DNA of 64,000 nt from IMGVR_UViG_3300044644_001125:124001-188000; one strand, 5' to 3'. Counted from the stretch's first letter, positions 137 to 45,892 are shown. Notes: generated from the sequence alone by a model not told the origin. Made by a program: numbers and translations.

Positions 137-1444
137 ATGACTATTTATGCCAAAATTTTAGCAACAAAAGAACACAACGAACGTCAACTAAGAATCTACG
201 TAAAATACATCGCAAAATGTGCAGTATTAAACGAGAATCTTTCAGAAGATACCTACACAGAGCTTCATCATATCTGCCCTAGAGTATTCTTTCCTGAATA
301 CAAAAATCTAAAAGATCATCCTTGGAATGGGATACGATTAACACTAGGCCAACACTTCACAGCCCATTTGATTCTTTCAAACGCATATACGTTTAACGGT
401 GCTATGTCTCAAGCATTTTACCTTATGTGCACACAGAATGGAAGTAAAGGTCAAGCAGTTGTTGATAGGTTCAAAAACTTGAAAACCTACTACGAAGATG
501 CTCGTAACCTAGTCATCAACTCTCAACGCGGTTTAACTATGGTTAAAAACAAAGAAACCGGTGTGTTTGGTCTGATTCCGGTAGAAGAGTACACTGCAAA
601 TCCTGATTTATACGAAACTGCCACTACTGGCATGGTAACAGTTCGCGATATTGAAACCGGTGAAATAATGAGTATGTCATGCGAAATTTACCACGCGAAT
701 AAGGACAAGTTTACTGCCATGAATACTGGAATCGTGCACGTCACAGACAAATTGACTGGTGAGAAGAAACGCATACCATCAGAAGAATATCAAGCAAATA
801 AAGAAAGCTACACAACTTCTGGGTCTGGAGTGACTACTGTTAGAGAATTAGCAACTGGTATTGTAATGAGTGTACCCGTCGATGAGTACTCAAACAATAA
901 AGATCGATTCGAAAGCATTGTTACTGGAACTACAACTGCAAGATTAATAAGCACCGGTGAGATGGTTGTTATCCCAGTAGAAACATACCATGCAAATCGT
1001 GATTTATACGAAACTGCTACTACTGGTCTATTGACTGCAAAAAACAAATTAACAGGTGAATCTGTTAGATTGACCAGAGAGGAATATGAGGCAAATAAGG
1101 ATTTGTATCACTTCCACACATCTGGAGTGTCAGTTATATCGACTATTACCGGTAAGAAATCGCGCATATCATGGGATGAATTTGAAAACAATCCTACCTT
1201 GTATTATAGAGTAAGCAATGTACGGTCAATATACGAACTAGGGAGTTACTCAAAACCAATAGATTATGTAAAACTACCACACGAAGTCAGTAATAAGTCC
1301 AGTTGGGTTCATAACCCAACCACTGGTGAATGTAAAAAGATATCAAAACACGAATACGTTGAATTAGATTGGTTAGCTGGTATCACACCAGAATATAAAA
1401 AACAATTAGAACGTGAACGTTACCATGCTAACAAAGTAAAGTAA
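137..1444 (+). CDS. HNH homing-endonuclease-like protein with seven ~33-aa C-terminal repeats
   Basis: N-terminal ELHHICPR..NGIRLT..QHFTAH HNH motif; repeats of TTG.vtv.d..TGE...i..eeY..N.dlY; TAAATA and GAGGAG upstream. Confidence 0.75.
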   Translation: MTIYAKILATKEHNERQLRIYVKYIAKCAVLNENLSEDTYTELHHICPRVFFPEYKNLKDHPWNGIRLTLGQHFTAHLILSNAYTFNGAMSQAFYLMCTQNGSKGQAVVDRFKNLKTYYEDARNLVINSQRGLTMVKNKETGVFGLIPVEEYTANPDLYETATTGMVTVRDIETGEIMSMSCEIYHANKDKFTAMNTGIVHVTDKLTGEKKRIPSEEYQANKESYTTSGSGVTTVRELATGIVMSVPVDEYSNNKDRFESIVTGTTTARLISTGEMVVIPVETYHANRDLYETATTGLLTAKNKLTGESVRLTREEYEANKDLYHFHTSGVSVISTITGKKSRISWDEFENNPTLYYRVSNVRSIYELGSYSKPIDYVKLPHEVSNKSSWVHNPTTGECKKISKHEYVELDWLAGITPEYKKQLERERYHANKVK

Positions 1445-1451
1445 TTATCTT

Positions 1452-1802
1452 TTAGTACCCTGTCGTGTTGGAATCATTGCGTGGTTCCTGCACTTCAGGT
1501 TTTTGATGGAACTTCTTTCTATCAGGTTTTTCCGGTTGAAACTTTTGAAATTTACCAGAAGTTGATCTTACTGGTGGCGAAATTTTAAATTTTCCATCTC
1601 TTTGATCCGCTGCATTCTTTGCACAAGATTTAGAAAATGAAGGATGACCATTATTTGAAATGCAGTTGGATGGGTCCGTTATTTTGTGTTTTTTGGACCA
1701 GTCAAATCCACTTTTCGACCCGGAACAGTCTTTCGTGCACGGTAATCCGTTGTATGATAACCCTGAATAGGTCAACTCTGTTATAATTTCATGTATTCTC
1801 AT
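1452..1802 (-). CDS. late hypothetical protein with capsid-targeting-like N-terminus
   Basis: MRIHEIITE start; TAAATA at 1808-1813 (minus); CTKDCSG motif. Confidence 0.55.
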   Translation of the reverse strand: MRIHEIITELTYSGLSYNGLPCTKDCSGSKSGFDWSKKHKITDPSNCISNNGHPSFSKSCAKNAADQRDGKFKISPPVRSTSGKFQKFQPEKPDRKKFHQKPEVQEPRNDSNTTGY

Positions 1803-1976
1803 GTTTGTATTTATTCACTAAAAGATAATCAACCCAACTAGCTCGAGCCTATCGGCTCTCGCAAATTCACATAACCCAACAAGCTCGGCACTAACGTGCC
1901 TCGCAATCAACAATTCAACCTATATTATATCACATCTAACATAACCACCCAATAAATACCTATAGGTACTAAAACT

Positions 1977-4208: not shown

Positions 4209-4601
4209 TTACAGGAGTGTGTCAGTTGGTTCTAAAAGATAATCTAAATCATCTTTTAGGTCAGGGAATTGGTTCTTTAGCCTAGCAGCCAATGACTTCT
4301 GTAGTTTGTTATTCTTAGTATTACCAGTACCAGATTCGTTATGTGAGAACAAACCAAACAAATATAGTTTTGATGGTGAACCAGCTATTCGGTATACTAT
4401 GCTAATATCCTGTGACAAATGCGCATGTTTAAGTTTCATTTTTCCAAGAGGACCATCCGAGTTGTATGGATAATCAGACGATCCAAATTTCTGGGCTGGG
4501 TTTTGTGCTTTCATTCGAATGAAGTCATTTGCCTTATTTTCCAATGTTCGATACTTAATAAGTGATTCGTCATACGCAGGACACATTTCAACCTTAAGCA
4601 T
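4209..4601 (-). CDS. RelE/YafQ-like mRNA interferase (putative)
   Basis: HAHLSQDISIVYRI..LFGLFSH resembles YafQ CHI.PD..LIY..GSH; start MLKVE overlaps upstream stop. Confidence 0.55.
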   Translation of the reverse strand: MLKVEMCPAYDESLIKYRTLENKANDFIRMKAQNPAQKFGSSDYPYNSDGPLGKMKLKHAHLSQDISIVYRIAGSPSKLYLFGLFSHNESGTGNTKNNKLQKSLAARLKNQFPDLKDDLDYLLEPTDTLL

Positions 4602-4758: not shown

Positions 4759-5077
4759 CGTTTTCTCCTCTTGTATTTTCACAAAGTTTTCGGGTATGCT
4801 CTATCATCTCATCTGCCGTTCTAGTAACCCATTTGCCATTTTCAGCAGCATCTAAAACTGTAGCAATATCTTCTTCACTAAAATGATCGCCACACGCGCA
4901 GTATTCTACATCTTCTTCATTATCTTTTAGTGCAGACTGGGCAATCTTATCATGCAACTCAAGTAACTCTTCTAAAGTCATTTTAGTCCAAGGACCATTC
5001 TCAGACGCGATTATTCTAGCAATATCCGCTTCACTAATCAAGTCATATTCGTTTGTGAATTCTTCATCTTCGTCCAT
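4745..5077 (-). CDS. acidic protein with two copies of the antitoxin-like motif
   Basis: SEADIARI..ENGPWTKMTLEE and SEEDIATV..ENGKWVTRTADE. Confidence 0.45.
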   Translation of the reverse strand: MDEDEEFTNEYDLISEADIARIIASENGPWTKMTLEELLELHDKIAQSALKDNEEDVEYCACGDHFSEEDIATVLDAAENGKWVTRTADEMIEHTRKLCENTRGENDEIK

Positions 5078-5268
5078 ATCAAAACCTATCCAAGTTGTCT
5101 TTAACCCATTTTAGAACACTTATGCGTTCATTATCTTTTAGGTCACTGCAAAGTACGGATGCTTTAATCGCATCTCCACGTACAGTGATTATCATTCGCG
5201 GTTTTGAATCAATCGTATCTGACCAAGAAATGGATTCTCCAATTTTCAAATAGCCGTTTAGTTTTGTA

Positions 5269-7381: not shown

Positions 7382-7693
7382 TGTTTGTAATTATAACTTA
7401 AAGATAATTGATGTCAAGTTCATGATTGATTGCGAGGCCTGATAGGGCCGAGCCTAATGTTAATGCGTTATTTGCTCTTCTTGATTAATGTAATTACTTG
7501 CGAGGCCTGATAGGGCCGAGCCTTGCTGTATTTTGCGAGGCCTGATAGGGCCGAGCCTTTGTTTAGGTAGATTCTATTATCTTTTAGAAAGGTTGTCAAG
7601 AGGTTTTCTTAGTGGAAGGATAAATAAGGGTGTAACTCGCGGATGGCCGTCCCAGTTACTCTAATGCTTTCAATCTTACAGGAGAACATCAGC

Positions 7694-8755: not shown

Positions 8756-8805
8756 TTTGAACAAAAGCCAGTAGACTCAACATCCACTGGCTTTTCTATT
8801 ATCTT

Positions 8806-10008
8806 TTAGTCTGTATAGTGAACGGTTTGTCCATACGAAGCGGTAGCGGATTCATTACCGAATACGATAAACAATGTATCCACTAGTTCACCGATGGCTG
8901 GCACCTCGTCGCTCACATACAGGTCAGTAAAATTAAGGAGTTTTTTAGGGCTTAGATTATTCTCTTTTAGGTATTCTAAAATACATCTATAATCTGTGCC
9001 ACCACCACCAACTGGTTCATAAGTTAACAAATCACCAGCATTGTCATGCGTAATTAAAATTGGATTGTAAATGTCAACATCATAACAGAATAAATGAATT
9101 TTATAATCAGTATACTGACTCATGATACCAGAGATCTCACCTAAGAATATAGAGATTTCGTTTTGTCCAATAGATCCACTCATGTCTAAAGCAATTGCAA
9201 TGTCAATCGTTTGTTCTGGAATCATACCAGGTAGAATAGCTCCAGATGCCCAACCTTTACGACTAGGTCTACTGAATGAATAGTTACTACGAACAATCGA
9301 TTGAATGTTCATCTGTAATAGTTCACGCCAATTCATTTTAGGTTCAGTCATATCTTGAATCAGTCTTTTAATAGCAGCAGGTACATTACCAGCGGCGGCC
9401 GCATGTGCTTGGACCATCGCTTCTTTCAAAGAATCTCTGATCTCCTGCCATTCTGCTTTTGAAAACTTAGGTCTACCGCTACCTTCTTTACCATCTTCGT
9501 CGCCGTCGCCATCACCGCTATCATCTTGAGAGAGGTGGTCGTCTAATGAATCCATGCCTGCGAGTATGTCATCGAGTGACACTACGGTCGCGTTTTCAAT
9601 AAGTAATTCGTAGATCTCCTCCCAAGATTTTCCACGATAGACTGGATCCAAGCACAGAGGAACTTGATCAATAACCGTTCCAATCTTTTCATCTACGAGC
9701 AGTATGTTTATGGCGAAATCTTGGGCTATATTTGACAACCGAGCATCTCGTGAGCCACGCCGCAAAAAATGTTCAAAACAAATGTGAAGAATCTCATGAC
9801 CGAATAAGAATTCAAGTTGTTTAACTGATAGTTTTTCAACGAATTCGGTGTTGTAATAGAAGTCTTTCCCATTAGTGGCCGCCGTTTGGCACCACGAACT
9901 GCTCTCCACAAGTTTCATCCGAGATGCCAAATTACCAAAAAAGCTAGCCCGTAGCATGAGACCGATGCGAGCAACCGTGAGTTTTTCTTCGATGGGAGTT
10001 AGTAACAT
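8806..10008 (-). CDS. DUF2201-type metallopeptidase-like plus VWA domain protein
   Basis: TAATNG, HEILH (HExxH), DMSGS MIDAS, GGGGTD, FTD. Confidence 0.85.
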   Translation of the reverse strand: MLLTPIEEKLTVARIGLMLRASFFGNLASRMKLVESSSWCQTAATNGKDFYYNTEFVEKLSVKQLEFLFGHEILHICFEHFLRRGSRDARLSNIAQDFAINILLVDEKIGTVIDQVPLCLDPVYRGKSWEEIYELLIENATVVSLDDILAGMDSLDDHLSQDDSGDGDGDEDGKEGSGRPKFSKAEWQEIRDSLKEAMVQAHAAAAGNVPAAIKRLIQDMTEPKMNWRELLQMNIQSIVRSNYSFSRPSRKGWASGAILPGMIPEQTIDIAIALDMSGSIGQNEISIFLGEISGIMSQYTDYKIHLFCYDVDIYNPILITHDNAGDLLTYEPVGGGGTDYRCILEYLKENNLSPKKLLNFTDLYVSDEVPAIGELVDTLFIVFGNESATASYGQTVHYTD

Positions 10009-10039: not shown

Positions 10040-10205
10040 TGAGTGTATTGTAGCTAAAAGATAATTGACTGTCAAGTTGTTTCTAAAAGATAACTAAAAG
10101 ATAATTGATTCATAATGCACCATATACTAAAAGATAATTGGTATATCTGGGACCTAAAAGATAATTGACTGTCAAGATGTTTCTAAAAAATAACTAAAAG
10201 ATAAG
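10040..10205 (-). promoter_or_regulatory. sigma70 promoter region with multiple TAAAAGATAA sites
   Basis: minus strand TTGACAgtcaATTATCTTTTAGctACAAT; six copies of the motif in 165 bp. Confidence 0.65.
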
Positions 10206-10517
10206 GTACCCATAATACAAATCCAAGAATACCAAATCTACTTATCAAGTTTCATAACTACGGAACCGTTACAATTGTAGAATCCAACCTGATGTATATC
10301 ACGAGAAGCACCAAGGTATTCACAACCCGATTCTGTTGCTATTTGAGTTCTGGTATCTTTTCTAGTATAGTCCAAGTAACCACCGATTAGGGTGAAGGCT
10401 ACAGAGCCTACTAAGACAACTACAATGATAATAGCAAGTACGATATCTTTCATGTTTGAAGCCTCTATATAATTGAAAAGACTAAAAGATAATCCCTCAT
10501 CTTTTAGTCTATAAAGT

Positions 10518-11989: not shown

Positions 11990-12590
11990 AGGTTGTAGTT
12001 TAAATCTAAAAGATGATGTTGTCAATCTTTATTTTAGAGTTTTTGAAATCTTTTCTGCTGGAATGCTCCATTCTTTCATTGTTCCATTATCAAATGTATT
12101 CTTTACGTAAGCAAAGAAACGTTTTTGCAATGCAGGATCCAACGAGTCCAATTTTTGTCTGGCGCTTGGAATGTCAATTATTTCTGATTTAAGCAACGCG
12201 GACCAAGAAATAGAAAGATCTCGTAGTTCTGCATCGGTAAATTCAGATGCATTGTTTTCTGGTATGATTAAAGAATCGATAATGTCAGTAGTCATGATAT
12301 TTACTCCAGTATTAATGTTAAGTGTAGTTTAAATCTAAAAGATGATGTTGTCAAGTATTTAATTTGGTTCGTTTCATCTTGGGTTACATTCTATTCCTAA
12401 AAGATAATGCTGTCAAGTGTTATTTTCTAGGTTTCTCGTCTCGGTGACGATGTGGCTATTATAGACTAAAATTAGATGTTGTCAACAGTTATTTTCAAAA
12501 AGTTTTCTAAACTGTTATTCAATTATCTTTTAGGTCAATACTGCCAACCACGAAACGAATCATACACTATAGGTATATAGGTGTCAACTG
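11990..12590 (-). promoter_or_regulatory. cluster of about five tandem sigma70 promoters
   Basis: repeated TGTCAA (TTGACA on minus) near 12020, 12350, 12412, 12480, 12582, several with ATCTTTTAG in the spacer. Confidence 0.6.
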
Positions 12591-27179: not shown

Positions 27180-27428
27180 TCAATTATCTTTTAGATCTCG
27201 AATAGGTCTAACAAAAAGTCTGCCATAACTCGCCTCATCATCGTCTGCTGTCCAATGATACCAAGTGGTTGCATACTCATTTTCTGATTCGTAAATCTCG
27301 TTTAGTTCTTCTCCTGTAGGTAATCTCCATCCAACTTTACCATCTATATTAAGAGAAAAGCAATACATCCTAGCTTCACCCAAAGTGGCTTCTATCTCTG
27401 TTGATTTTGGTGCTATTTCAAAGTACAT
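27180..27428 (-). CDS. mini DUF1566/Lcl-like family protein
   Basis: FEIAPKSTE..MYCFSLNIDGKVGWRLPT..RPIRDLKDN. Confidence 0.75.
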   Translation of the reverse strand: MYFEIAPKSTEIEATLGEARMYCFSLNIDGKVGWRLPTGEELNEIYESENEYATTWYHWTADDDEASYGRLFVRPIRDLKDN

Positions 27429-29015: not shown

Positions 29016-29170
29016 AAGATAATTAACCTAGGTTGCTTGGTATTATCGCGAGAGCCGGTATTGTTTATATCTGTATCGCGAGCCACGCTAGTGGCGAGCC
29101 ATTAACCACTTGACATTTCAGAAAATCCGTTTATACTACCAGAATCTTAACAAACCTGAGAATACACAAA

Positions 29171-31340: not shown

Positions 31341-32819
31341 CTATTTCTTACTAGGCTTTTTGTTCAACTTCTTTTCGAGTTTCTTGGCTTCCTTCGCTAT
31401 TCGTTTTTCTTCTTTAACTATAGCAGTCCAATCATTTTCCCACATAACAACCAAGTTGTATCCAAAATCAATTATCTCTTGGTCCATTCTACAAGAATGT
31501 TCGTACAATTCACCAAATGTTTTTCCATGTTTTATACTAAAAGATGATGGATCAAATACTGATGGGTTTCCATGATAATAATCGCCGTGAAATTGATATA
31601 TTGTATTCGTTTCAATGCAATACCCATCAACTGGTCTTGTTCGTTTCTCCGGTAATCTAAATTCTCTAACCAGTTCAAGTCCTAAACTATCCAACCATGC
31701 GTTAGCAGGTTTAGAACCATTAACACAACTATTCTTTACCTTTGGATTTTCTTTCTCGCATTCAGGGCATCCATACTTGTAGTGTTTACCAACTAGTATA
31801 GAAAAATCACCATGCACTGGGCAGGTAACTATAATAGGTACATTTTTAATATCACCACATAGTTCCACCTTCGAATAATCATATTTGAAATCATGAATCA
31901 AATTTAACTTTTCCACCAATTCTGGAACCTTTAAACTAACACGCTCACCCATCTCACGTCTGCTACAGGTATTACAACCCCAGCCGGTTAGATGTGATCT
32001 CGGGGATATTTCAAAATCACCATGCTCTTTGCAGGTAACAATTATTGTCGTTCCACGCGATTTTACATATACAGTTTTATCATATTCGTACCGGAAATCA
32101 TGTTTCTCATTCGCCTTGGCTACATATTCCTCAGTTGTTGTACGTCTATGTGGTCTTTCAACACCTTTAGTTTGTTCAGATATTGAATCTTTACCACATT
32201 TCGCACATCCATAGTAGGTGTGAGCATGTGCGGTTTGTGTGAATATCCCATGTTTTTCACATTCGATATTTATTTTCGTAGTACTATCGACATAATAGCT
32301 TTCAATATCTGGGTATGTATACTTTCCTTCGTGCTTTTCTTCGAATCTAACAAGCATTTCATCTAATGGTACTTTGCGACGTTCACTGCATTTCTCGCCT
32401 TTGCATTTTCCACACCCATGTTTATTAATATGGTCTGAAGGTTTTTGTAAAAAAGGCCCATGAACTAAGCAGTGTATCTCCACCTTCTTGTGCATGTGTT
32501 CATATTTCACCTGCGAGTAGTCAAATTTAGGATTTTCTATATTATCATGTGCTTCATTGAACTTTTCAATGACGTCTTCTTGGGACATTCTACTGTTTTT
32601 ACTATGCGCATCATTAGCACACTGCTTGCACCCATACATAGAGCGAACATGATCATACAATCTCTGTTCAAATAAACCATGAACTGGGCAATGTATCAAT
32701 ACCAGGCTATCTTTCCCAATATATTCGACACTTGAGTAATCGAATTTTCCATTGAACTTATTAGTTGCTTCTGCTATCATTCTTGCGGCGTAAGATTCGC
32801 CTCTGCTAAATACTGTCAT
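31341..32819 (-). CDS. homing-type endonuclease: five C..HG.F..C..C zinc repeats plus Vsr/PD-(D/E)xK-like domain
   Basis: YDYS.V.Y..I.C.VHG.F..GC..C repeats; VDGY..QFHGDYYHG..WEND. Confidence 0.75.
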   Translation of the reverse strand: MTVFSRGESYAARMIAEATNKFNGKFDYSSVEYIGKDSLVLIHCPVHGLFEQRLYDHVRSMYGCKQCANDAHSKNSRMSQEDVIEKFNEAHDNIENPKFDYSQVKYEHMHKKVEIHCLVHGPFLQKPSDHINKHGCGKCKGEKCSERRKVPLDEMLVRFEEKHEGKYTYPDIESYYVDSTTKINIECEKHGIFTQTAHAHTYYGCAKCGKDSISEQTKGVERPHRRTTTEEYVAKANEKHDFRYEYDKTVYVKSRGTTIIVTCKEHGDFEISPRSHLTGWGCNTCSRREMGERVSLKVPELVEKLNLIHDFKYDYSKVELCGDIKNVPIIVTCPVHGDFSILVGKHYKYGCPECEKENPKVKNSCVNGSKPANAWLDSLGLELVREFRLPEKRTRPVDGYCIETNTIYQFHGDYYHGNPSVFDPSSFSIKHGKTFGELYEHSCRMDQEIIDFGYNLVVMWENDWTAIVKEEKRIAKEAKKLEKKLNKKPSKK

Positions 32820-33288
32820 ATTGATGTCTCCTCTATAGACGTTGATTAGTAGTTCAAGATATTTCCCGATATCTTTTACTATGAGTATTTATCTTTTTGA
32901 ATCTAAAAGATAATGAAACCCAAGGAACCCGACTTAGATCGGGTTTCTTTTTGTCTAAAAGATAATGCCTTAAGGCTCGCACCTAGCGGTGCTCGCACCT
33001 CACAAATCCACCCACAATAGCTCCTCACAATATCCACCGTATACTTACATTGGCTCGCACCTAGCGGTGCTCGCGACCTCACAAATCCACCCACAATAGC
33101 TCGTCGCTAACGCTCCTCGCATCACTAAAATAAAATCCAACCTATCGGCACTCGCATCACTAAAATACAAACCAGCAACCTCACAAATCTAACCCACATC
33201 AAACCAACACCAAAAATACAAACAAATCCACTTGACATTCAACAAATCTCTAAGTACAATACGTAAAAAATACATTATAGGAACAAGC

Positions 33289-33561: not shown

Positions 33562-33833
33562 TGGCAAGACTAGACATAAAATTTGAACTCGCACCAGAGA
33601 AATACTGGAATTGTATGACGCATGAGGAAATCCGACTCTACTTGTTCTCATTGAATATTGATGGTACAACAGACTGGCGAGTACCCACTAACTACGAAAT
33701 TCTACAATTAAAAGGCATATGTTGGCAATCCGGTGAACTTGTTTGGTATAATGAAGCTGTTCTATATTTTAACAACCATCCAAGTAACGTCAGTGCATAC
33801 TACAAGTTAATTCCAGTGAGAGATAAAAGATGA
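33561..33833 (+). CDS. array unit 2
   Basis: FELAPEKY..DWRVPT..IPVRD; TAATG overlap. Confidence 0.75.
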   Translation: MARLDIKFELAPEKYWNCMTHEEIRLYLFSLNIDGTTDWRVPTNYEILQLKGICWQSGELVWYNEAVLYFNNHPSNVSAYYKLIPVRDKR

Positions 33834-34141
33834 TTGAAATAGCACCCAAAGAATATGAAATCCGATCAAGCTGGGACGATGCCCGTTTGTATTGTTTTGC
33901 TCTTCGCATAGATGGTAAAACTGGTTGGAGGTTGCCAACTGTTAAGGAGTTGAATAGTATCTGGGCTATGCCCGGCTGCGATTTTGCTAGATGGTATTAC
34001 TGGTCATCTGAAGAAGGTGACATTGGGTATGCTATTGATGTAGATTTTAATCGACAAGGTATAGATTATAAGTCATCGCCTGAGAATAAGGGATATGATG
34101 ATAACTTAGTTAGACCAGTAAGAGATCTAAAAGATGATTGA
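33830..34141 (+). CDS. array unit 3
   Basis: MIEIAP..GWRLPT..YWSS..RPVRDLKDD. Confidence 0.8.
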   Translation: MIEIAPKEYEIRSSWDDARLYCFALRIDGKTGWRLPTVKELNSIWAMPGCDFARWYYWSSEEGDIGYAIDVDFNRQGIDYKSSPENKGYDDNLVRPVRDLKDD

Positions 34142-34340
34142 GATAGGTGAAACAACAGATGCAAGATTGACCTACGCAGAAGCAGTGATGTATTGTTTTT
34201 GTTTAGGTGATGGTTGGAGATTGCCGACACGTCACGAATATTTCAATACAGACGAGGCAATGGCGTTTTCATGGTATAACGGTAAACAAAGCACGAGTCT
34301 GCGGCCAGTTACTCCAGTACGAGATCTAAAAGATGATTGA
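34134..34340 (+). CDS. array unit 4
   Basis: YCFCLGDGWRLPT..PVRDLKDD. Confidence 0.75.
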   Translation: MIEIGETTDARLTYAEAVMYCFCLGDGWRLPTRHEYFNTDEAMAFSWYNGKQSTSLRPVTPVRDLKDD

Positions 34341-34557
34341 AACAGAAATTGAAGTAGGTAAACCTGCAAAACCCATGACATATGATGAAGCGGTATTCTA
34401 TTGTTTTTGTTTAGGTGATGGTTGGAGATTGCCAACTGGCGAAGAATATATGCGTTTAAATCTGCAAATGTGTTGGTGGGAAGGTCAACGTTCATTAGGT
34501 GAAAGTTCATTAGGTGAATGGTTAGTTGTTCCAGTGCGAGATCTAAAAGATGATTGA
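34333..34557 (+). CDS. array unit 5
   Basis: YCFCLGDGWRLPT..PVRDLKDD. Confidence 0.75.
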   Translation: MIETEIEVGKPAKPMTYDEAVFYCFCLGDGWRLPTGEEYMRLNLQMCWWEGQRSLGESSLGEWLVVPVRDLKDD

Positions 34558-34765
34558 AACCAAATTTGAAATAGGTGTAAGATCAACAACAAAGATGACC
34601 TATGACGACGCAGTGATGTATTGTTTCTGTTTGGGTGATGGCTGGAGATTACCTACTATTGAAGAATTCGACGGCAATGTAAACTTCGTTTGGAACTTTA
34701 ATGACCAAACTAACCGTAATAACCGTTGGCATGTAATCCCAGTACGAGACTTACAAGATGATTGA
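34550..34765 (+). CDS. array unit 6
   Basis: YCFCLGDGWRLPT..PVRDLQDD. Confidence 0.75.
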   Translation: MIETKFEIGVRSTTKMTYDDAVMYCFCLGDGWRLPTIEEFDGNVNFVWNFNDQTNRNNRWHVIPVRDLQDD

Positions 34766-35015
34766 AATAGCACCTGAAGAATATTGGGTTGAATGTACGT
34801 GGCAAGAAATCAAACTGTACTTGTTTGTATTGACTATTGATGGTAAGCAGGATTGGAGATTACCAACCGAAGAGGAACAAGAGGATTGGTTTGTTAGCAT
34901 ACCGAATATCAAGGCTGAACGATGGACAATTACGGATACTTTGGATGAAGAATGGTATTCTCGAGTTGGATCCAAGTTTTTGTTAATCCCAGTACGAGAT
35001 CTAAAAGATGATTGA
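34758..35015 (+). CDS. array unit 7
   Basis: IDGKQDWRLPT..PVRDLKDD. Confidence 0.75.
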   Translation: MIEIAPEEYWVECTWQEIKLYLFVLTIDGKQDWRLPTEEEQEDWFVSIPNIKAERWTITDTLDEEWYSRVGSKFLLIPVRDLKDD

Positions 35016-35268
35016 GATAGCACCGGAAGAGTATTGGAAAAAATCGACCATCCACAATATCGATTTGTACTTGTTTGTTTTGACGATTGATGGTAAGATT
35101 GGCTGGAGATTGCCTACCAGCGACGAATGGATTTATTACGTGTATGATGCAAGTGACCCAAACCATTGGATGGGTAATTATTGGTTTTCAGATGAACTTG
35201 GTTATATTGAGGATCAGGGAGAACCTGAACTTGATATTATACCAGTAAGAGATCTAAAAGATGATTGA
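35008..35268 (+). CDS. array unit 8
   Basis: IDGKIGWRLPT..PVRDLKDD. Confidence 0.75.
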   Translation: MIEIAPEEYWKKSTIHNIDLYLFVLTIDGKIGWRLPTSDEWIYYVYDASDPNHWMGNYWFSDELGYIEDQGEPELDIIPVRDLKDD

Positions 35269-35473
35269 GATAGGTGAAACTACAAATTCAAGAATGACCT
35301 ACGCCGATGCCGTATTTTACTGTTTTTGTCTAGGTGGCGACTGGAGATTACCAACTGAAGGGGAATCCGCGCGTTATATACCAGGTCACATTGGTTGGTT
35401 AAAAGACGACTTCCTGCGCCATGGTGTTAGTCTTTGGCCCGTAACTCCAGTGCGAGATCTAAAAGATGATTGA
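35261..35473 (+). CDS. array unit 9
   Basis: YCFCLGGDWRLPT..PVRDLKDD. Confidence 0.75.
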   Translation: MIEIGETTNSRMTYADAVFYCFCLGGDWRLPTEGESARYIPGHIGWLKDDFLRHGVSLWPVTPVRDLKDD

Positions 35474-35717
35474 ACCCAAACTCGAAGTAGCACCTGAAGA
35501 GTACTGGATAGAAACCGAGGTGACTAATCTTATATTTTATCTTATGTTATTGGACATTGATGGTAACCGGGATTGGCGGGTCCCAACACTTGACGAAACT
35601 CGAGTTGTAAGAGTTCATGGCATTCGTGGGATGTGGAATTCTAATGATACGGTTGATAACATTTCCCACAAAATTAAATATTGGTTAATCCCAGTACGAG
35701 ATCTAAAAGATGATTGA
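35466..35717 (+). CDS. array unit 10
   Basis: IDGNRDWRVPT..PVRDLKDD. Confidence 0.75.
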   Translation: MIEPKLEVAPEEYWIETEVTNLIFYLMLLDIDGNRDWRVPTLDETRVVRVHGIRGMWNSNDTVDNISHKIKYWLIPVRDLKDD

Positions 35718-35949
35718 AGTAGCACAGAAAAACCAATGGCTCTCAGTTAGTCAAGCCGATGCTAAACTTCGGATGTTTGTTCTGGGTGATGGTTGGAGGT
35801 TTCCGACCTTCGTGGAAACCCACAGTCTGCAATTTCCAATGATGGTTTCACCAGTTTGGAATACAGATACTATTAATAACCCTGAGTTAGATAAGCATCA
35901 TGATGTTCGACGGGTGTTTATCCCAGTACGAGATCTAAAAGATGATTGA
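35710..35949 (+). CDS. array unit 11
   Basis: LGDGWRFPT..PVRDLKDD. Confidence 0.75.
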   Translation: MIEVAQKNQWLSVSQADAKLRMFVLGDGWRFPTFVETHSLQFPMMVSPVWNTDTINNPELDKHHDVRRVFIPVRDLKDD

Positions 35950-36181
35950 AGTAGCACAGAAAAAGCAATGGATTCCCCTTGTACGAGACGATGTTAAACT
36001 TCGTGTGTTTTTACTAGGTGATGGGTGGAGATTACCAACCTTTGACGAAACTCGACTGCTGCAATTTCCAACGATGACCACACCTTACTGGTATGCGGAT
36101 ATCATTAATAATCCAGAGTTAGATAAGGGTCGTAGCAATCGTCGATTACTTATCCCAGTACGAGATCTAAAAGATGATTGA
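35942..36181 (+). CDS. array unit 12 (close paralog of unit 11)
   Basis: MIEVAQK..LQFP..INNPELDK shared with unit 11. Confidence 0.75.
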   Translation: MIEVAQKKQWIPLVRDDVKLRVFLLGDGWRLPTFDETRLLQFPTMTTPYWYADIINNPELDKGRSNRRLLIPVRDLKDD

Positions 36182-36407
36182 AATAGCACCTGTTGAATAT
36201 CACAAAAAATTAACGTATACGGATGCCAAGTTATATTGTTTTTCTTTGAATATAGATGGTAAGGTTGGTTGGAGATTACCAACACAGAAAGAATTTTTCA
36301 ATAACCGAAACATATATGGTTGGTATGCTGATGGTGTAGGTGAACGAAGTGATCGATTAACTAATCTTGGAACTATTATCCCAGTACGAGATCTAAAAGA
36401 TGATTGA
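36174..36407 (+). CDS. array unit 13
   Basis: YCFSLNIDGKVGWRLPT..PVRDLKDD. Confidence 0.75.
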   Translation: MIEIAPVEYHKKLTYTDAKLYCFSLNIDGKVGWRLPTQKEFFNNRNIYGWYADGVGERSDRLTNLGTIIPVRDLKDD

Positions 36408-36609
36408 AATAGGTCCTAGAACAAATACTCCATTATCCAAAGAGGATGCGGAATTTTACTGTTTTTGCCTTGGTGACGGTTGGCGATTAGCAACAGCGGA
36501 TGAGTTTTACTCGATGCTTGGTAGTATTATTGGTTGTTACGATTCTTTTAGTGACCCAAATACCGTAAAATTATTCTTCACACCAGTACGAGATCTAAAA
36601 GATGATTGA
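36400..36609 (+). CDS. array unit 14
   Basis: YCFCLGDGWRLAT..PVRDLKDD. Confidence 0.75.
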   Translation: MIEIGPRTNTPLSKEDAEFYCFCLGDGWRLATADEFYSMLGSIIGCYDSFSDPNTVKLFFTPVRDLKDD

Positions 36610-36811
36610 GATAGGTGAACAATCAGAATTTAAAATGACCTACGACGAAGCAGTTATGTATTGTTTTTGTTTAGGTGATGGTTGGCGATTACCAAGTCAA
36701 GAAGAATACCACAAATACATCCCACCCTATTTTGGTGTAACTTGGTATCAAGAACATGGTTTGTGGTTTAATTTACCAGTAATCCCAGTGCGAGATATAA
36801 TCGATGATTGA
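36602..36811 (+). CDS. array unit 15
   Basis: YCFCLGDGWRLPS..PVRDIIDD. Confidence 0.75.
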   Translation: MIEIGEQSEFKMTYDEAVMYCFCLGDGWRLPSQEEYHKYIPPYFGVTWYQEHGLWFNLPVIPVRDIIDD

Positions 36812-37040
36812 GCAAGCACCCAAAGAATACGAAAAAGAGTTGACGTGGAATGCAGCAATCTTCTACTGTTTCTCACTTAATATTGAAGGTGATGTTGGTT
36901 GGAGATTACCGACTTATGAAGAAATACGTACTATCGTTGGTTACACGAATACGTGGAAATATTGGTACGGTGAAGTCAGAGATGACAGTGAGACTAAAAG
37001 ATATCGAGTAATCCCAGTGCGAGATCTAAAAGATGATTGA
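36804..37040 (+). CDS. array unit 16
   Basis: YCFSLNIEGDVGWRLPT..PVRDLKDD. Confidence 0.75.
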   Translation: MIEQAPKEYEKELTWNAAIFYCFSLNIEGDVGWRLPTYEEIRTIVGYTNTWKYWYGEVRDDSETKRYRVIPVRDLKDD

Positions 37041-39030: not shown

Positions 39031-39145
39031 TTAGTTACTCTCTTGTTAGTATCCGGTATTTATGGCTCGCACCTAGCGGTGCTCGCTACCAAACAAAATC
39101 CAATTAAACCTTGACATCCCTTATCTTTTAGCTATAATACGACCC

Positions 39146-40984: not shown

Positions 40985-41269
40985 TGTCTAAAAGATAATT
41001 GAAAATAATGGTTGACATTAGTATTCATTAGCGTTACAATTAACCATAGATTGAAATTACCCAAAAGCAGTGAACGAGATACCTTGAAAAATAGGTTGAC
41101 AATCCCCATTATAAAGTCTATACTTAATCATATTCTAGCTAAAAGCAGTTACACTAAAGTAGTTTACAGAGACCAACTCAATTATTATCGACACCCAGTC
41201 TATTAATTCTATTATCTTTTAGAGACCATCTCAAATCATATCGACACCAAGTCTATTATCTTTTAGGCA

Positions 41270-41745
41270 CCCGCCAACCCTTGCTCACCGAATTACTAGA
41301 ACTAACTTAGAAAGGTGAGAGAACTGTCAAGAAAGCCGTGCACAGGCGACCATAACGTGCCCTTAAACCCTAGTCTAATTGAATCATAGGGGATGGAAGT
41401 TCCGAAGTTGACAGCGGAGATATAACACACTACCCCGCCAGATGAGTTATGGGATACGCCTTCGTACAACCCATTTGTGTTATAGCGAAATTAGTAAAAA
41501 AGGCTAAAGATGGGTTGAGAAAACCCACGTCATATGAATGAGGTAGCAGTTGTTCATATGGCCACCGTCAGATTAATAAGACTGAGCTCGAGGTACCGGC
41601 TGACCGCCTCTGTAATTGCTCTACTGCTGCTGTGATGCGATACTTGTATGCAGAACAACTTTGGCTATGTTTATATAATGTAGCCAAAACAACTTAGAAG
41701 TCACCCGAGTTTTTCGGGTTAAGATGTTCAGCTCCTCATACTGCA
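41270..41745 (+). ncRNA. large structured non-coding RNA candidate (class unknown)
   Basis: no ORF; more than 10 nested helices; G-U wobbles favour + strand; two sigma70 promoters at ~41032 and ~41096. Confidence 0.6.
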
Positions 41746-41859
41746 GTATTAAAAGCCTCTATAATAGATCTATTAATGATTCTATTATAAATCTATAATT
41801 GTAGGAGCGTATAAGATAATTCTAAAAGATAATAGATCCATTACTTCCTACCTGCTTAA

Positions 41860-42190
41860 GCCACGCGCACATACATTTTTAGATTCCCTTATAGCTGTTT
41901 CCATTCGCGCACATACATTTTAGATCTATTCGAACCCATACATTATAGCTTTTTACCAGATGCACACATACATTATAAACTCCATTCGAACACATACATT
42001 TTAAACTAAAAGATAATTACCTAATAAGATCATCTATAAGGCCATAACTAAAGATCATCAATACAAAACATCATAACTAAAAGATAATAGTTCAAAGATA
42101 AACATCATCTATAAGACAATCATAATTCAATCATCTTTTAGTAATAAACATCATCTATAAGACAATCATTGTTACATTATCTTTTAGTAT
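41860..42190. repeat. iteron-like direct repeats (candidate origin)
   Basis: five CATACATT copies; two ATAAACATCATCTATAAGACAATCAT; several TAAAAGATAA sites. Confidence 0.55.
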
Positions 42191-42937: not shown

Positions 42938-44027
42938 CTTCCCAGTTATTACTAACTTGGCTGAGTTCAAAGCCCAAGTTGGTGAGGTAAAAGGTATTGA
43001 GTTCAAAACTGATGCCAATGGATATACCGTTGCTTCGTATCATATACTCGAAAGCGACGTGTTCAAGAATGAGTATGCACGTGAATGTCGTGGTATTACC
43101 TTTGACCCATCTGGAAAAGTTGTATCAAGACCATTCCACAAGTTCTTTAATTTAAACGAAAACCAGTTTACTCAAGAGGGTGTATTAGATTGGAACTCAG
43201 TAACTTCGGTTATGGACAAAATGGACGGCAGTATGATCACTCCTGTTTTGATTGATGGTTCAATTATCTTCAAAACTAAAAGATCATTTACCTCAGCTGA
43301 AGCCAATTACGCTAATGAGAAGTTCTGCTACAAGTCACACCAGTATCAATTCTCTAAGTTTATGTGTGAACAAGGATTCACACCCATTTTCGAATTGACT
43401 TCACGAGCCAATCGAATTGTTTGTTCGTACAAAGAACCTGCGTTGACTTTGTTAGCCATTAGATCAAATGAGACCGGTGAATATTTTTCACGTGATGATC
43501 TTGTTCTATTAGCAAAAGGTTGGGAAATACCATATGTTAAGTCCTTTATAACTGAATACGAGTTATCTGGTTTATATTGGTTTAAAAATTCAGTAGTGAC
43601 GGATACTAATAAGGAAGGATATGTAATCCAGTTTTCAAATGGCCAAATGGTCAAAATGAAAACTAACTGGTATATGACCTTACATCATGTTGTTACGTTT
43701 ACTACTGAACGCAATGTAGCAGAGATGGTTGTATCTGAGAAAGTTGATGACTTCAAAGCGTATATTGCCAGTATCGATGAACCTGAAATGATGGAAACGG
43801 TTAATCGGGTTGAAAAACGTGTAGTTACTGAGATCAATGATATTATAGTTGATGTTGATGAAATTATCGATTTGAAAGAGTTTGATAACCCAAAAGACTT
43901 TGCTCTTAAGTATCGTAGCCATCCACTATTCTACTTGTTGATGAATTCTTTCAAAGGTAAGGAAAATGATTGGGTTGACTACTTTTTGAAATATCGGTTA
44001 AAATCATATTCTACCGAGTGTATTTGA
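42930..44027 (+). CDS. T4 Rnl1-like RNA ligase
   Basis: RECRG, SRPFHKFFN, KMDGS, FEL..NRIV, EGYV, VKMK. Confidence 0.9.
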   Translation: MNNFPVITNLAEFKAQVGEVKGIEFKTDANGYTVASYHILESDVFKNEYARECRGITFDPSGKVVSRPFHKFFNLNENQFTQEGVLDWNSVTSVMDKMDGSMITPVLIDGSIIFKTKRSFTSAEANYANEKFCYKSHQYQFSKFMCEQGFTPIFELTSRANRIVCSYKEPALTLLAIRSNETGEYFSRDDLVLLAKGWEIPYVKSFITEYELSGLYWFKNSVVTDTNKEGYVIQFSNGQMVKMKTNWYMTLHHVVTFTTERNVAEMVVSEKVDDFKAYIASIDEPEMMETVNRVEKRVVTEINDIIVDVDEIIDLKEFDNPKDFALKYRSHPLFYLLMNSFKGKENDWVDYFLKYRLKSYSTECI

Positions 44028-45892
44028 AATGTTACAGTTGAATGACAAAACCCTTGACAACCCTAAATATTAGATTACAAATGCCTAACTTCACAGTTGG
44101 GCATTATCTTTTAGGAGGCAGTATGAAAGACCAAATTGACGTATTAATCGAAGAAGTATCAAATAGATTCAGTAATTTAGAAATAACCAAAACAGAAGAT
44201 ACCATCACGTTAACCGAAAATGGTATTGTTTTCGGGAAAGTTAAAGCACATTTCACTGCAGATGATCATTTCATCGGATGGGCAATTAATTGCTTGCTCA
44301 AAGAAGAAATCTGTAGTAAACTCTACCCGAAAACTTGGGAGTGCCAACGAATGATGAACAAAGTGTTTAACACCCAACAGGATGCTTTACATGAGTTGAT
44401 CAGATTTTATGCACTAGGATTTAAACTATTAAACAGAGAATCAGAATGCAGCCATTAATTTACGCAGTCGGAATAGCCGCAGTAGTTGCGATAATCGCAT
44501 ACGAAGTGGTACATTATATACCATATATCATCAGTCACATAACAGAAATACTTGCTCACATCGCAGTTGGATTGGTTGTAGTAGGTACCGGATATTTTAT
44601 CACCCATTTTGGAATTGTTGAGGAAAACAAATGAAACAAGAAACCTTTACCATCATCGCGTGTTCTGCGATGTTCACCGGAGTTATCATGACGTTAACTG
44701 ATTATAACCCTATTTTCGGAGCATATATCACCATTATCGCGTCAGTTTCTTGGATTGTCGGTATTGCTACTGGCTATGTTAAACTTACAACCGAGGAATA
44801 ACCAATGGCTGAAGTGCTTACTTTACAATCGTTTGACGAAGAACCGTCTAAGAACAAGTTAGTTATCTTTAACTTTAATAAAAACGAGTATGGCATCACC
44901 AAAACATTAACGGATGTTACTGCTAGGGAATCCAATAAAGGTAAACTAGTGTTTCATCTGGTCTTTGATATCAAAGATAACATTAAGCATACTAAGTTCA
45001 CGGATGCCAACAGTGATGTTGAAAACATTCGAGTTATCAAAGTTAACTTATCAACTGCTGTACGAGATACTCACGAGATTTACGCTGGTGAGATGATTCG
45101 TTATTTGGAAGAGTTGATCTTTGAAGAAGACTATCGTTGGCCCAATGTTGTTGTAATTGATTCGTCTGACGAGATAGTCGGAACTAACGTAGTGAACAAG
45201 TTGTTGAAACTGGCAACGGATACCAATATTGATATCTATACTGCTACTCGTTTAAGAAGTAAGAACTATTCGACAGGGAATATATGAGATACGTAATCTT
45301 ATTCTTATTAGCTGGATCTGTAATGGCTGAAGATTTTAAAGTAGATCCCATCCAATATGATATCCCAGCTTCTAAATGGGTTCCTGCTGCTCGCTGGTAT
45401 GAAAGCAAAGGTCATTGTACTGATCCAATGAATCTATTTGAAGTATGCCAAAGTAAAGGCGCTTTGCTTTTTCACCAAAAGGTTGCTGATTACAAGAAGA
45501 AAGTTGTGTTGGCTGCCGCAGCGAAATCTAAAGCAGTTGTGGTTAAAGCTAAACCTTTGAAAAAGGCGAGTAAACATGCTTAAGATATCGCCTATTATTG
45601 TAATCCTAAGTTTAATAACATTGATTGGGTTTGTTCTGGTGGCAATCCGAGAGAATGGGGCATTTGTAGGGCTGGCTATTATCGCTACTAGTATATTCTT
45701 AACCTGCTTTCTGTTGTATTTCACCGAACATTATTTGAGTTTAGTGCTTAAGTAACCATCATTTATGGCAGGATTTGCCAAATAATCCTGCCACCAACCT
45801 CCTGTAATTTCCAAAACCACAATCTCAAAAAGCAGGCTAAATACATGATACCAAAGTCAGTATTAACTGCCCATTTTTGAGATAAAGCCCAC

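What the first reader, a model, noticed from the sequence alone, without database searches (positions are those of the whole stretch)
1444..44115. TAAAAGAT(A/G)AT motif shared by promoter spacers, intergenic regions and the array junctions
Seen: roughly 50 copies by eye in both orientations. There are six in 10055-10205; copies inside -35/-10 spacers (TTGACAgtcaATTATCTTTTAGctACAAT near 10060, also 12007, 12336, 12399, 39121); inverted pairs at 4233/4249 and 10484/10497; and a cluster around the candidate origin. It also encodes the LKDD/LKDN ends of the lectin-like genes. I did not spot it in the 45-63 kb structural block. Inference: a binding site for one phage protein (repressor, nucleoid or segregation factor, or recombinase). 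Its presence at most cassette junctions may couple it to array rearrangement.
Basis: partly seen in the sequence, partly recalled or inferred. Interest (0 to 1): 0.65.

Follow-up and report, generated by a model that had tools for sequence, protein, structure and literature searches.

The report
Twelve-base regulatory word in jumbo phage
A freshwater jumbo phage repeats one exact 12-base word (CTAAAAGATRAT) about 184 times, at set positions in its early promoters and at gene ends, most likely as the docking site of a phage-made gene regulator, which would be an unusually large and uniform control system for a phage.

Summary
TAAAAGATRAT occurs 47 times in the window against 0.26 expected. That leaves 32 after removing the 15 lectin-gene junction copies. 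The full unit is the 12-mer CTAAAAGATRAT. It is the commonest 12-mer of the 327-kb genome (184 copies; reversed control 1) and is almost invariant.

It is confined to early and non-structural regions. It takes fixed positions at host-type (TTGACA-N17-TAnnnT) promoters: 0 or 2 nt upstream of -35, or inverted inside the spacer, often supplying the TAG of the -10. It also sits on stop or start codons at gene ends, in all three reading frames. It is under purifying selection between relatives. Related phages with the same promoter type lack it.

Best reading: an asymmetric box for a phage-encoded DNA-binding regulator. It resembles mycobacteriophage stoperators and P1 C1 operators, embedded in PeSL-like promoter cassettes. 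Candidate binders are two AraC-type proteins encoded 16-18 kb before the window. This assignment is inferred and binding is untested.

Mosaic breakpoints are modestly enriched at the box. No recombinase, ParB N-domain, MotA or AsiA gene was found.

The parts
1444..1455 (-). Box whose TAA is the stop codon of ORF 1452-1802(-). It abuts the end of HNH-type ORF 137-1444(+).
1818..1829 (+). Intergenic box, inverted relative to ORF 1452-1802(-), 16 nt upstream of that ORF's start.
4232..4259 (.). Tight inverted pair (12-4-12) inside the 3' end of ORF 4209-4637(-).
4919..5141 (-). Two in-frame sense copies (LKDN), at 4919-4930 and 5130-5141, in ORFs 4745-5077 and 5079-5288.
7571..7599 (-). Sigma70-like promoter TTGACA-17-TAGAAT with the box (7576-7587) in forward orientation in the spacer. 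The last T of the box is the first T of the -10.
8798..8809 (-). Box whose TAA is the stop codon of HNH endonuclease gene 8806-10008(-).
10047..10205 (-). Upstream region of the HNH gene: promoter TTGACA(10075-10070)-17-TACAAT(10052-10047) with the box 10054-10065 in its spacer. A roughly 100-bp duplicated unit brings the total to 4 exact and 4 near copies, all in one orientation.
10479..10510 (-). Tight inverted pair (12-2-12, one arm degenerate) forming a 14-bp hairpin with a T-rich tail. It looks like a terminator and lies just after the GroES-like gene 10518-10802(-).
11997..12025 (-). Promoter TTGACA-17-TAAACT of the MoxR-like ATPase gene (10860-11945), with the inverted box 12006-12017 two nt after the -35.
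12326..12354 (-). Promoter TTGACA-17-TAAACT of ORF 12029-12295, with the inverted box 12335-12346 in the spacer.
12388..12416 (-). Promoter TTGACA-17-TAGAAT with the inverted box 12397-12408 in the spacer.
12522..12533 (-). Forward box about 25 nt downstream of the -10 of promoter 12587-12559.
18799..18810 (+). Antisense copy inside ORF 18722-18925(-).
20786..20797 (-). Box whose final AT plus the next G forms the ATG listed as the start of ORF 20395-20787(-).
24893..24904 (-). 3' end (RDLKDN-stop) of Lcl_C gene 24890-25186(-).
27183..27194 (-). 3' end (RDLKDN-stop) of Lcl_C-family gene 27180-27452(-).
29012..29023 (+). Box whose TAA is the stop codon of ORF 28224-29015(+).
31537..31548 (+). 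Antisense copy inside HNH endonuclease gene 31341-32819(-).
32903..32966 (+). Two boxes 52 nt apart that flank a hairpin with a T-run, upstream of the HNH gene 31341-32819(-).
33823..37037 (+). Tandem array of about 16 small Lcl_C (DUF1566) genes. Thirteen junctions carry the exact G-variant of the box, which encodes LKDD and supplies both the ATG of the next gene and the TGA stop (ATGATTGA overlap). One junction has an 11-mer only and three are degenerate.
39111..39138 (+). Promoter TTGACA-16-TATAAT of ORF 39146-39466, with a 1-mismatch inverted box (39120-39131) in the spacer.
40988..42187 (.). One of four genomic copies of a roughly 1.2-kb noncoding repeat. In order it holds a terminator, a box, two strong promoters (41012-41040 and 41096-41124), two inverted boxes (41211, 41255), the Polynucleobacter-1 sRNA (41335-41485), a conserved RNA region with a terminator, short ~30-nt repeats and iteron-like repeats, and five more boxes (41822-42187).
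44103..44114 (-). Last copy before the structural block. It is inverted on the + strand and sits immediately 5' of a GGAGG Shine-Dalgarno sequence and an ATG, inside or at the start of ORF 44042-44458.

Best explanation
CTAAAAGATRAT is most likely the recognition box of one phage-encoded, sequence-specific DNA-binding regulator, probably a monomer reading an asymmetric site. The box is wired into the phage's host-sigma70-type early promoters and gene boundaries. Placed 0 or 2 nt upstream of the -35, it is where class-II activators sit. Inverted inside the spacer or over the -10, a bound protein would exclude RNA polymerase. Pairs bracketing the -35, and arrays spaced about three helical turns apart, would allow cooperative binding. 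Co-directional copies on stop codons and at every junction of the lectin-gene array could act as roadblocks, like stoperators. The sequence analysis directly shows the word's abundance, sharpness, geometry, selection and lineage specificity. Protein binding and its regulatory sign are inferred. The binder may be one of two AraC/XylS-type two-HTH proteins encoded outside the window, at genome positions 105771-106373 and 106901-107605, with roughly 30% probability. A side effect of 184 identical words inside conserved promoter cassettes is recombination that adds, removes and swaps gene cassettes.
For: Abundance and sharpness: 139 + 45 exact copies, and single-mismatch neighbours are nearly absent except at positions 10 and 12. 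Distribution: the box is absent from structural blocks, and its density tracks intergenic TTGACA (rho 0.70, P 6e-6). Fixed geometry: box-gap 0 or 2-TTGACW occurs 14 times, TTGACW-gap 8-inverted box 12 times, and gap 2-4 10 times. There are 13 convergent pairs at start-to-start distances of 26-31 (six at 28), and tandem spacing is 27-35 nt. Five of the eight best promoter-like sites in window 7.4-12.7 kb hold the box in their spacer. Orientation: both orientations occur, with no bias for intragenic copies, which points to DNA-level rather than RNA-level reading. Selection: 44 of 51 and 17 of 21 aligned sites are identical in relatives at about 91% identity. Divergence is 3.8-4.9% in the box against 8.8-9.7% in its flanks, and intragenic copies show 0.5% against 5.2% for coding sequence. 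Lectin genes end on the box in all three frames. Not a core promoter part: a relative's ATPase orthologue has four TTGACA-N17 promoters with unrelated spacers, and relatives G006-G009 have 0-1 copies. Candidate binder: HTH_18 at 44.5 bits, above the cut-off, and a PDB profile match to AraC DNA-binding domains over residues 97-191. All seven metagenome contigs encoding homologues (61-98% identity) carry the exact box at 1.2-4 per kb. None of four box-less relatives encodes a homologue. Precedent for a monomer reading a 13-bp asymmetric site at more than 20 dispersed promoter and intergenic positions: PMC9283540.
Against: There is no binding, footprint or transcription-start data. Metatranscriptome contigs only show that the region is in RNA libraries. 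Near-total invariance over 12 positions in 184 sites is sharper than most regulator sites. About 25 copies lie deep inside long genes, and some in late genes, with no obvious promoter. The co-occurrence of the AraC-like genes with the box is confounded by shared ancestry, and the box-less relatives are only 32-53% complete. Only about 110 of roughly 480 proteins were scanned, so another binder may exist. The structure model of the candidate was poor (pLDDT 52.6). In about 30 paralogous promoters, the slot upstream of -35 holds either the box or a plain A-rich tract. That pattern also fits a passive UP-element role.
Confidence: 0.55

Rival explanations
1. The primary role is recombination. The box, with its promoter cassette, would be the crossover point that duplicates, deletes and exchanges gene cassettes. 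This would make it a PeSL-type mobile regulatory cassette or a site for an unrecognised recombinase.
For: Boxes sit at gene boundaries and at 13 of about 16 junctions of the lectin array. Twelve of 59 mosaic or indel boundaries lie within 5 nt of a box, against 5.8 expected. A 118-bp insert is flanked by two boxes where the relative has one, and homology breaks exactly at a box. Homing-endonuclease genes are flanked by boxes. PeSL precedent: PMC4122927, PMC2839356.
Against: The enrichment at breakpoints is only about twofold, and the test gave the observed data two chances (either genome). No serine or tyrosine recombinase was found. Microhomology needs no 12-position invariance and no fixed spacing to the -35. 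Intragenic copies are conserved without rearrangement. The array cassettes are old (60-84% identity), so they are not actively shuffling.
Confidence: 0.15
2. A passive promoter module read by the host. The box would be an A-tract or UP-element-like sequence contacted by the RNA polymerase alpha subunit, or a site for a host nucleoid protein, that boosts or shapes early promoters.
For: In about 30 paralogous early promoters, the slot just upstream of -35 holds either the box or a plain A-rich tract. The box contains an A4 tract. Its spacing to the -35 is fixed at 0 or 2 nt.
Against: UP elements and nucleoid-protein sites are degenerate, whereas this word is invariant. It also occurs inverted inside spacers, in coding sequence and on stop codons. 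Relatives with the same promoters and A-rich upstream tracts lack it. The paired-box pattern turned up only six isolated single hits, in unrelated bacterial genomes, none clustered as in the phage.
Confidence: 0.12
3. Replication, partition or packaging sites. The boxes would be iterons or a centromere-like loading site for a replication initiator or DNA-organising protein.
For: Dense clusters, with iteron-like repeats, lie in four copies of a noncoding repeat. Tandem arrays are spaced at about 3 helical turns. Intragenic copies are not tied to promoters. A protein with a ParB C-terminal-like region is encoded at window 19236-20207.
Against: The box is absent from about 45% of the genome, namely the structural blocks. 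Its geometry is fixed relative to the -35 and -10. No ParB N-domain was found. Pfam gave no hit for the ParB-like ORF.
Confidence: 0.07
4. An RNA-level signal, such as a processing, stability, or translation stop-and-restart cassette at gene junctions.
For: The word carries TAA or TGA in two frames and, in the G variant, an ATG. Twenty-seven co-directional copies overlap stop codons. Junction copies give the ATGATTGA overlap. Tight inverted pairs form terminator-like hairpins.
Against: About half the copies are antisense to local transcription or lie in untranscribed promoter spacers. There is no orientation bias inside genes. Single copies have no structure.
Confidence: 0.05
5. An enzymatic target on DNA. 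The box would be a site-specific nick (as in T5 or phiKMV-type phages) or a sequence-specific base-modification site.
For: The sharpness is restriction-site-like. The genome holds many HNH endonuclease genes. A queuine tRNA-ribosyltransferase (DpdA-like) gene is present.
Against: Nothing links any of these enzymes to the word. Promoter-locked geometry is not expected for nick or modification sites.
Confidence: 0.05

Closest known systems
Operator/stoperator sites of Cluster A mycobacteriophages (L5 gp71 repressor)
   Same: Both are asymmetric 12-13-bp sites with a tight consensus, dispersed at about 1 per 1.7-1.8 kb. Both lie in promoters and in short intergenic gaps at gene ends. In L5 a monomer with two DNA-binding domains reads the site, and the consensus is lineage-specific (PMC9283540, PMC6550527).
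   Different: This is a T4-related jumbo phage with no integrase, and it has six times more sites. Both orientations are used, with a position-dependent pattern rather than one orientation. No gp71 homologue was found. The Gram-negative-type promoters carry the box at fixed registers.
PeSL (promoter-early stem-loop) cassettes of T4-type phages
   Same: Both have near-consensus sigma70 early promoters with stem-loops and a shared leader with a Shine-Dalgarno sequence, repeated between small genes in plastic regions. Both are rare in structural modules and are associated with indels between close relatives (PMC4122927, PMC2839356).
   Different: PeSLs have no extra invariant word. Here a 12-mer that belongs to neither hexamer is the most conserved element. 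It occurs in both orientations, inside genes and on stop codons, and it outnumbers the promoters.
C1 repressor operators of phage P1 (from my own knowledge, not checked here)
   Same: More than a dozen asymmetric 17-bp operators are scattered over the genome. They are bound by a monomeric repressor, singly or as overlapping inverted pairs, and often overlap promoters.
   Different: P1 is temperate and has far fewer sites. No sequence or protein similarity was tested.
AraC/XylS-family boxes (MarA/SoxS marbox, ToxT toxbox; from my own knowledge)
   Same: A two-HTH domain binds an asymmetric, A/T-rich box as a monomer. Boxes work in either orientation depending on distance, abut or overlap the -35 for class II activation, and occur as direct or inverted pairs. 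The phage encodes two HTH_18 proteins.
   Different: Known boxes are degenerate and number a few to tens. Binding of the phage proteins to this word is untested.
T4 MotA/AsiA middle promoters
   Same: A phage-specific box is added to host sigma70 promoters in a T4-related phage.
   Different: The Mot box replaces the -35 at a single register and orientation. Here the -35 is intact, the registers differ, and no MotA C-domain or AsiA was found.

Membership tests
PeSL promoter-terminator cassettes (T4-type phages) | Repeated near-consensus sigma70 early promoter with a shared leader and Shine-Dalgarno sequence | tested here: met
   About 30 paralogous TTGACA-N17-TAnnnT promoters share a 26-nt leader. 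The scan tool finds them in the window.
PeSL promoter-terminator cassettes (T4-type phages) | Associated stem-loop | tested here: met
   8-bp-arm inverted repeats bracket the -10, with compensatory changes between promoters. Terminator hairpins lie just upstream of many boxes. The position differs from published PeSLs, where the stem-loop is upstream of the promoter.
PeSL promoter-terminator cassettes (T4-type phages) | Concentrated in plastic regions and linked to indels between close relatives | tested here: met
   Absent from structural blocks. Breakpoints are enriched about twofold, P about 0.01, with clean examples.
Cluster A mycobacteriophage operator/stoperator system | Many dispersed copies of one asymmetric 13-bp site in promoters and short intergenic gaps | tested here: met
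   184 copies of an asymmetric 12-mer: 95 intergenic, 28 on gene edges, about 41 in promoter registers.
Cluster A mycobacteriophage operator/stoperator system | Site orientation strictly follows the direction of transcription | tested here: not met
   56 forward against 38 inverted in co-directional contexts. Forward dominates at gene ends (41 against 16), and inverted dominates in promoter cores.
Cluster A mycobacteriophage operator/stoperator system | gp71-type repressor gene and temperate lifestyle (integrase) | tested here: not met
   phmmer and blastp of L5 gp71 against all ORFs gave nothing below E 0.44. No Phage_integrase or Resolvase hit.
AraC/XylS-type regulon (MarA/ToxT-like boxes) | Regulator with the two-HTH AraC DNA-binding domain encoded by the phage | tested here: met
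   P0001 matches HTH_18 at 44.5 bits (cut-off 33.6). P0002 matches HTH_18 and HTH_AraC below cut-off. The profile hits AraC DNA-binding domains in the PDB over residues 97-191.
AraC/XylS-type regulon (MarA/ToxT-like boxes) | Asymmetric box abutting or overlapping the -35 | tested here: met
   Box-gap 0 or 2-TTGACW occurs 14 times.
AraC/XylS-type regulon (MarA/ToxT-like boxes) | The regulator binds the box | not testable with these tools
   Only co-occurrence is available: 7 of 7 homologue-bearing contigs carry the box, and 0 of 4 box-less relatives carry a homologue. This is confounded by ancestry.
T4 MotA/AsiA middle-promoter system | MotA and AsiA genes, and a box at -30 replacing the -35 | tested here: not met
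   No MotCF or AsiA hit. The -35 TTGACA is retained and the registers differ.
ParB-parS / KorB-type sites | ParB N-terminal domain protein and a palindromic site | tested here: not met
   No ParB_N hit in the genome. The word is asymmetric. The ParB-like ORF matches only a C-terminal PHROG.
Site-specific recombination sites (hix/res/lox-type) | Cognate serine or tyrosine recombinase, and inverted half-sites with a 2-8 bp core | tested here: not met
   No recombinase was found. Only 3 tight pairs exist (gaps 2-4), and most pairs have 14-19-nt gaps.
TnpB-derived RNA-guided repressors (TldR) | Nuclease-dead TnpB, and a guide matching a TAM-flanked promoter target | tested here: not met
   Three window TnpB-like ORFs keep the RuvC D-E-D residues, and their 3' flanks hold no box-like guide. 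Criteria taken from 10.1101/2023.11.30.569447.

The most novel reading that the evidence does not exclude
A lytic, T4-related jumbo phage runs its whole early programme with a single-word code. One phage-encoded monomeric two-HTH (AraC-type) factor reads about 180 identical 12-bp boxes. Depending only on register and orientation, it activates promoters (box abutting the -35), shuts them off (box in the spacer or -10), and blocks elongation at gene ends. This would be a stoperator-like global system outside temperate actinophages. The same word also seeds cassette exchange.
Probability: 0.2. Interest if true: 0.8.

Novelty: new variant of a known kind. Interest (0 to 1): 0.6.

Why it matters
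Temporal control in jumbo phages that rely on host RNA polymerase is poorly understood. This lineage offers a very clean handle on it: one invariant 12-mer, about 184 sites, a small set of fixed promoter registers, and a short list of candidate binders. If a single factor reads it, the system would extend the stoperator and P1-C1 style of dispersed asymmetric operators to lytic T4-related phages of Gram-negative-type hosts. It would also give a compact, portable switch, one box per promoter with the sign set by position, for synthetic biology. The word marks cassette boundaries too, so it links regulation with the modular evolution of early 'ORFan' regions. The phage is common in lakes, with holders in 23 studies, so the biology is ecologically relevant. 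The host is not known, however, which limits experiments to heterologous systems.

Tried and rejected
- **Chance or composition:** rejected by shuffles and by Markov backgrounds of order 1-5.
- **Artefact of the lectin-gene array:** rejected. 32 window copies and about 158 genome copies lie elsewhere.
- **Peptide-level constraint (LKDD):** rejected. Family members end on the box in all three frames, and neighbouring codons vary synonymously.
- **Directional phage-specific promoter:** rejected, because both orientations are used equally in one-strand gene blocks. The likely late promoter is a different word, CTAAATAC. The T4 late box TATAAATA occurs only 7 times.
- **MotA/AsiA, sigma70-family sigma, HTH_3 repressor, ParB N-domain, resolvase, integrase:** none found in the genome.
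- **L5 gp71 homologue:** none.
- **RNA-guided TnpB/TldR targeting:** no support.
- **Host-genome origin of the word:** a scan of 185,579 species genomes for the paired pattern gave six unrelated palindromes.
- **Literature search for the word:** no phage paper.
- **Near-identical GenBank phage:** none.
- **Transcript ends from public metatranscriptomes:** only short contigs over coding regions, with no start-site information.
- **Structure of the AraC-like candidate:** the model was too poor to search with (pLDDT 52.6).
- **Close relatives of P0001 in IMG/VR by pattern search:** none returned.
- **PHROG and Pfam scans of about 110 proteins:** no other sequence-specific regulator found.

Full report
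**What the window is.** The window is bases 124001-188000 of a 327,256-bp IMG/VR virus record with 38% G+C. The capsid protein is T4 gp23-like. It is 66-72% identical to those of PA5oct, Vibrio phage 2.275.O and the Rak2/CBB-type jumbo phages. No near-identical GenBank phage exists. The DNA is found in lake-water metagenomes from 23 studies. The window holds early-type small genes, many homing endonucleases, three TnpB-like genes, DNA and RNA ligases, and a MoxR-like ATPase with GroES. From about 45 kb onward it holds tail-fibre genes.

**Observation.** TAAAAGATRAT occurs 47 times in the window, against 0.26 in dinucleotide shuffles and at most 2.3 under Markov orders 1-5. Fifteen copies are lectin-gene junctions, leaving 32. 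The true unit is CTAAAAGATRAT. It is the commonest 12-mer of the genome: 139 copies with A and 45 with G at position 10, 184 in all, against 1 for the reversed control. Single-mismatch neighbours are almost absent except at position 12 (C 21, G 8). Copies fill 30-170, 220-240 and 300-327 kb and avoid the structural blocks.

**Where the copies sit.** A rough gene map gives 95 intergenic copies, 28 on gene edges, 17 at co-directional 3' ends, and about 40 inside genes, split 21 sense and 19 antisense. In the sense direction only one frame is open. The other two frames contain TAA or TGA, so the uniform LKD[ND] reading is trivial.

**Geometry at promoters.**
- The phage uses near-consensus TTGACA-N17-TAnnnT promoters.
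- Relative to exact TTGACW, the box takes fixed registers. It lies forward 0 nt (4 times) or 2 nt (10 times) upstream of the -35. It lies inverted 8 nt after the -35 (12 times), where its TAG starts a TAGAAT-type -10. It lies inverted 2-4 nt after the -35 (10 times).
- Thirteen convergent pairs bracket the -35, at start-to-start distances of 26-31 (six at 28). Divergent pairs are rare. Tandem arrays are spaced 27-35 nt, about three helical turns.
- In window 7.4-12.7 kb, five of the eight best promoter-like sites carry the box in the spacer.
- Box density per 10 kb tracks intergenic TTGACA (rho 0.70).
- About 30 paralogous early promoters share a 26-nt leader. Their upstream slot holds either the box or a plain A-rich tract. 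Their spacer holds either the box or an 8-bp-arm inverted repeat with compensatory changes.

**Gene ends.**
- In co-directional gene runs, forward copies dominate at 3' ends (41 against 16), and 27 overlap the stop codon.
- The small paralogous genes are Pfam Lcl_C/DUF1566, with about 27 in the genome. Most end PVRDLKDD-stop. The G variant supplies the next gene's ATG.
- Some family members end PVRDL-stop, PVRDC-stop or RDI-stop on the box's TAA, or VRSKR-stop on its second stop. The word is therefore kept in all three frames, while adjacent Arg and Val codons vary. The constraint is on DNA, not on the peptide.
- Three array junctions have lost the word, so it is not indispensable at every junction.
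- Two tight inverted pairs form terminator-like hairpins.

**Relatives.**
- Two close relatives (90-97% nt; capsid 95% aa) carry 53 and 26 copies.
- Of aligned sites, 44 of 51 and 17 of 21 are identical, where the flanking divergence of about 9% predicts roughly a third. Intragenic copies diverge 0.5%, against 5.2% for coding sequence.
- Four more distant relatives (capsid 82-85%; 114-186 kb contigs) have 0-1 copies. The two examined by k-mer count have no hyper-repeated word; their commonest words are promoter hexamers with flanks.
- The ATPase orthologue in one of them (73% aa) sits behind four TTGACA-N17 promoters with unrelated spacers.
- The word is therefore an added, lineage-specific layer and not part of the core promoter.

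**Rearrangement.** Against the two close relatives, 12 of 59 block ends or long gaps lie within 5 nt of a box, against 5.8 for random intergenic positions (P about 0.01). The test is slightly generous because either genome could score. A 118-bp insert is flanked by two boxes where the relative has one. At another site, homology stops exactly at a box. This matches the PeSL picture of promoter cassettes as crossover points. No serine or tyrosine recombinase gene was found.

**Candidate binder.**
- The genome has no MotA C-domain, AsiA, HTH_3, ParB N-domain or sigma70 region 2, and no L5 gp71 homologue.
- Among about 110 proteins scanned, the only sequence-specific regulators are two AraC/XylS-type proteins in one early operon. 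These are genome 105771-106373 (P0001; HTH_18 at 44.5 bits, cut-off 33.6) and 106901-107605 (P0002). Their profile matches solved AraC DNA-binding domains across both HTH motifs.
- From my own knowledge, such domains bind asymmetric boxes as monomers, often abutting the -35.
- Homologues at 61-98% identity lie on seven metagenome contigs. All seven carry the exact 12-mer at 1.2-4 per kb. The four box-less relatives encode none.
- This is consistent with the assignment but is confounded by ancestry and by incomplete contigs. The AF2 model was too poor to use.

**Rivals.** The alternatives are recombination as the primary role, a passive UP-like module, replication or partition sites, an RNA-level signal, and a nick or modification target. 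None explains together the invariance, the use of both orientations, the fixed promoter registers and the absence from relatives. An RNA-guided TnpB/TldR mechanism was considered and found unsupported.

**Verdict.** The feature is real, highly non-random and under selection. It is most likely the box of a phage-encoded regulator embedded in PeSL-like early promoter cassettes. It works like stoperators or P1 C1 operators but fails their membership tests. Binding, regulatory sign and the identity of the binder remain to be shown.

Noticed in passing
window 41335-41485 (+); genome 35014-35164(-), 232703-232853(+), 310903-311053(+): Rfam Polynucleobacter-1 sRNA (68-80 bits) is present four times. 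Each copy lies inside a roughly 1.2-kb noncoding repeat, behind two strong sigma70-type promoters. Each is followed by about 250 nt of further conserved RNA-like sequence with a terminator, then short ~30-nt repeats and iteron-like repeats.
   Followed up: partly
genome 76.7-100.3 kb (about 30 sites); window 10009-10047: Early promoters share a 26-nt leader ending in GGAG. Many carry an 8-bp-arm inverted repeat bracketing the -10, with compensatory changes between promoters (GGGTACAG/CTGTACCC, GGTGATAG/CTATCACC, GCGAGTAG/CTACTCGC). This suggests a selected hairpin or cruciform at the -10.
   Followed up: partly
upstream of structural genes, e.g. window 60-63 kb and genome 0-30, 170-220, 240-300 kb: CTAAATAC occurs 20-35 nt upstream of 22 of 83 gene starts in the box-free blocks. 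T4's late box TATAAATA occurs only 7 times in the genome. CTAAATAC is a likely late-promoter word, and it shares CTAAA with the box.
   Followed up: partly
window 12646-13929(+), 48502-49779(-), 58523-59791(+): Three IS605-type TnpB-like ORFs have intact RuvC D-E-D residues and no adjacent TnpA. Two of them sit inside the tail-fibre block.
   Followed up: partly
genome 38937-41040 (locus L123:8937-11040): The large terminase appears split. A homing-endonuclease ORF is followed by an ORF that matches only the C-terminal part of the large-terminase PHROG profile. That ORF's listed ATG lies inside a G-variant box.
   Followed up: no
locus L136:2311-8679 (relative contig, ENA ERZ18647255): A related phage contig carries a type I-F-variant CRISPR-Cas module (Csy4, Cas7fv, Cas5fv, Cas3). 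It lies between lectin-gene arrays and the two AraC-like genes. The contig also has 27 exact boxes in 20.7 kb.
   Followed up: no
genome 73448-74209(-) (locus L125:3448-4209): A queuine tRNA-ribosyltransferase (DpdA-like) gene is present. It hints that the phage DNA may carry 7-deazaguanine modification.
   Followed up: no
window 39070-39087; also after boxes at window 24.9, 27.2 and 32.97 kb, and genome 224.7 and 237-238 kb: A recurrent GC-rich hairpin of the form GCGAGCACC-NNNN-GGTGCTCGC follows many gene ends. It looks like a family of repeated terminators distinct from the box.
   Followed up: no
locus L135:750-1160: In a contig encoding a 61%-identical AraC-like homologue, eight box variants (CCAAAAGATAAC, CTAAAAGATAGT) sit in a roughly 53-bp tandem repeat just downstream of the regulator gene, beside nine exact boxes.
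   Followed up: no
genome ends (1 and 327256): Relative G010 aligns across the record's two ends (its 31950-34658 to genome 324532-327254, and its 34485-38833 to genome 1-4352). The 'linear' record is therefore effectively a complete, circularly permuted genome.
   Followed up: partly
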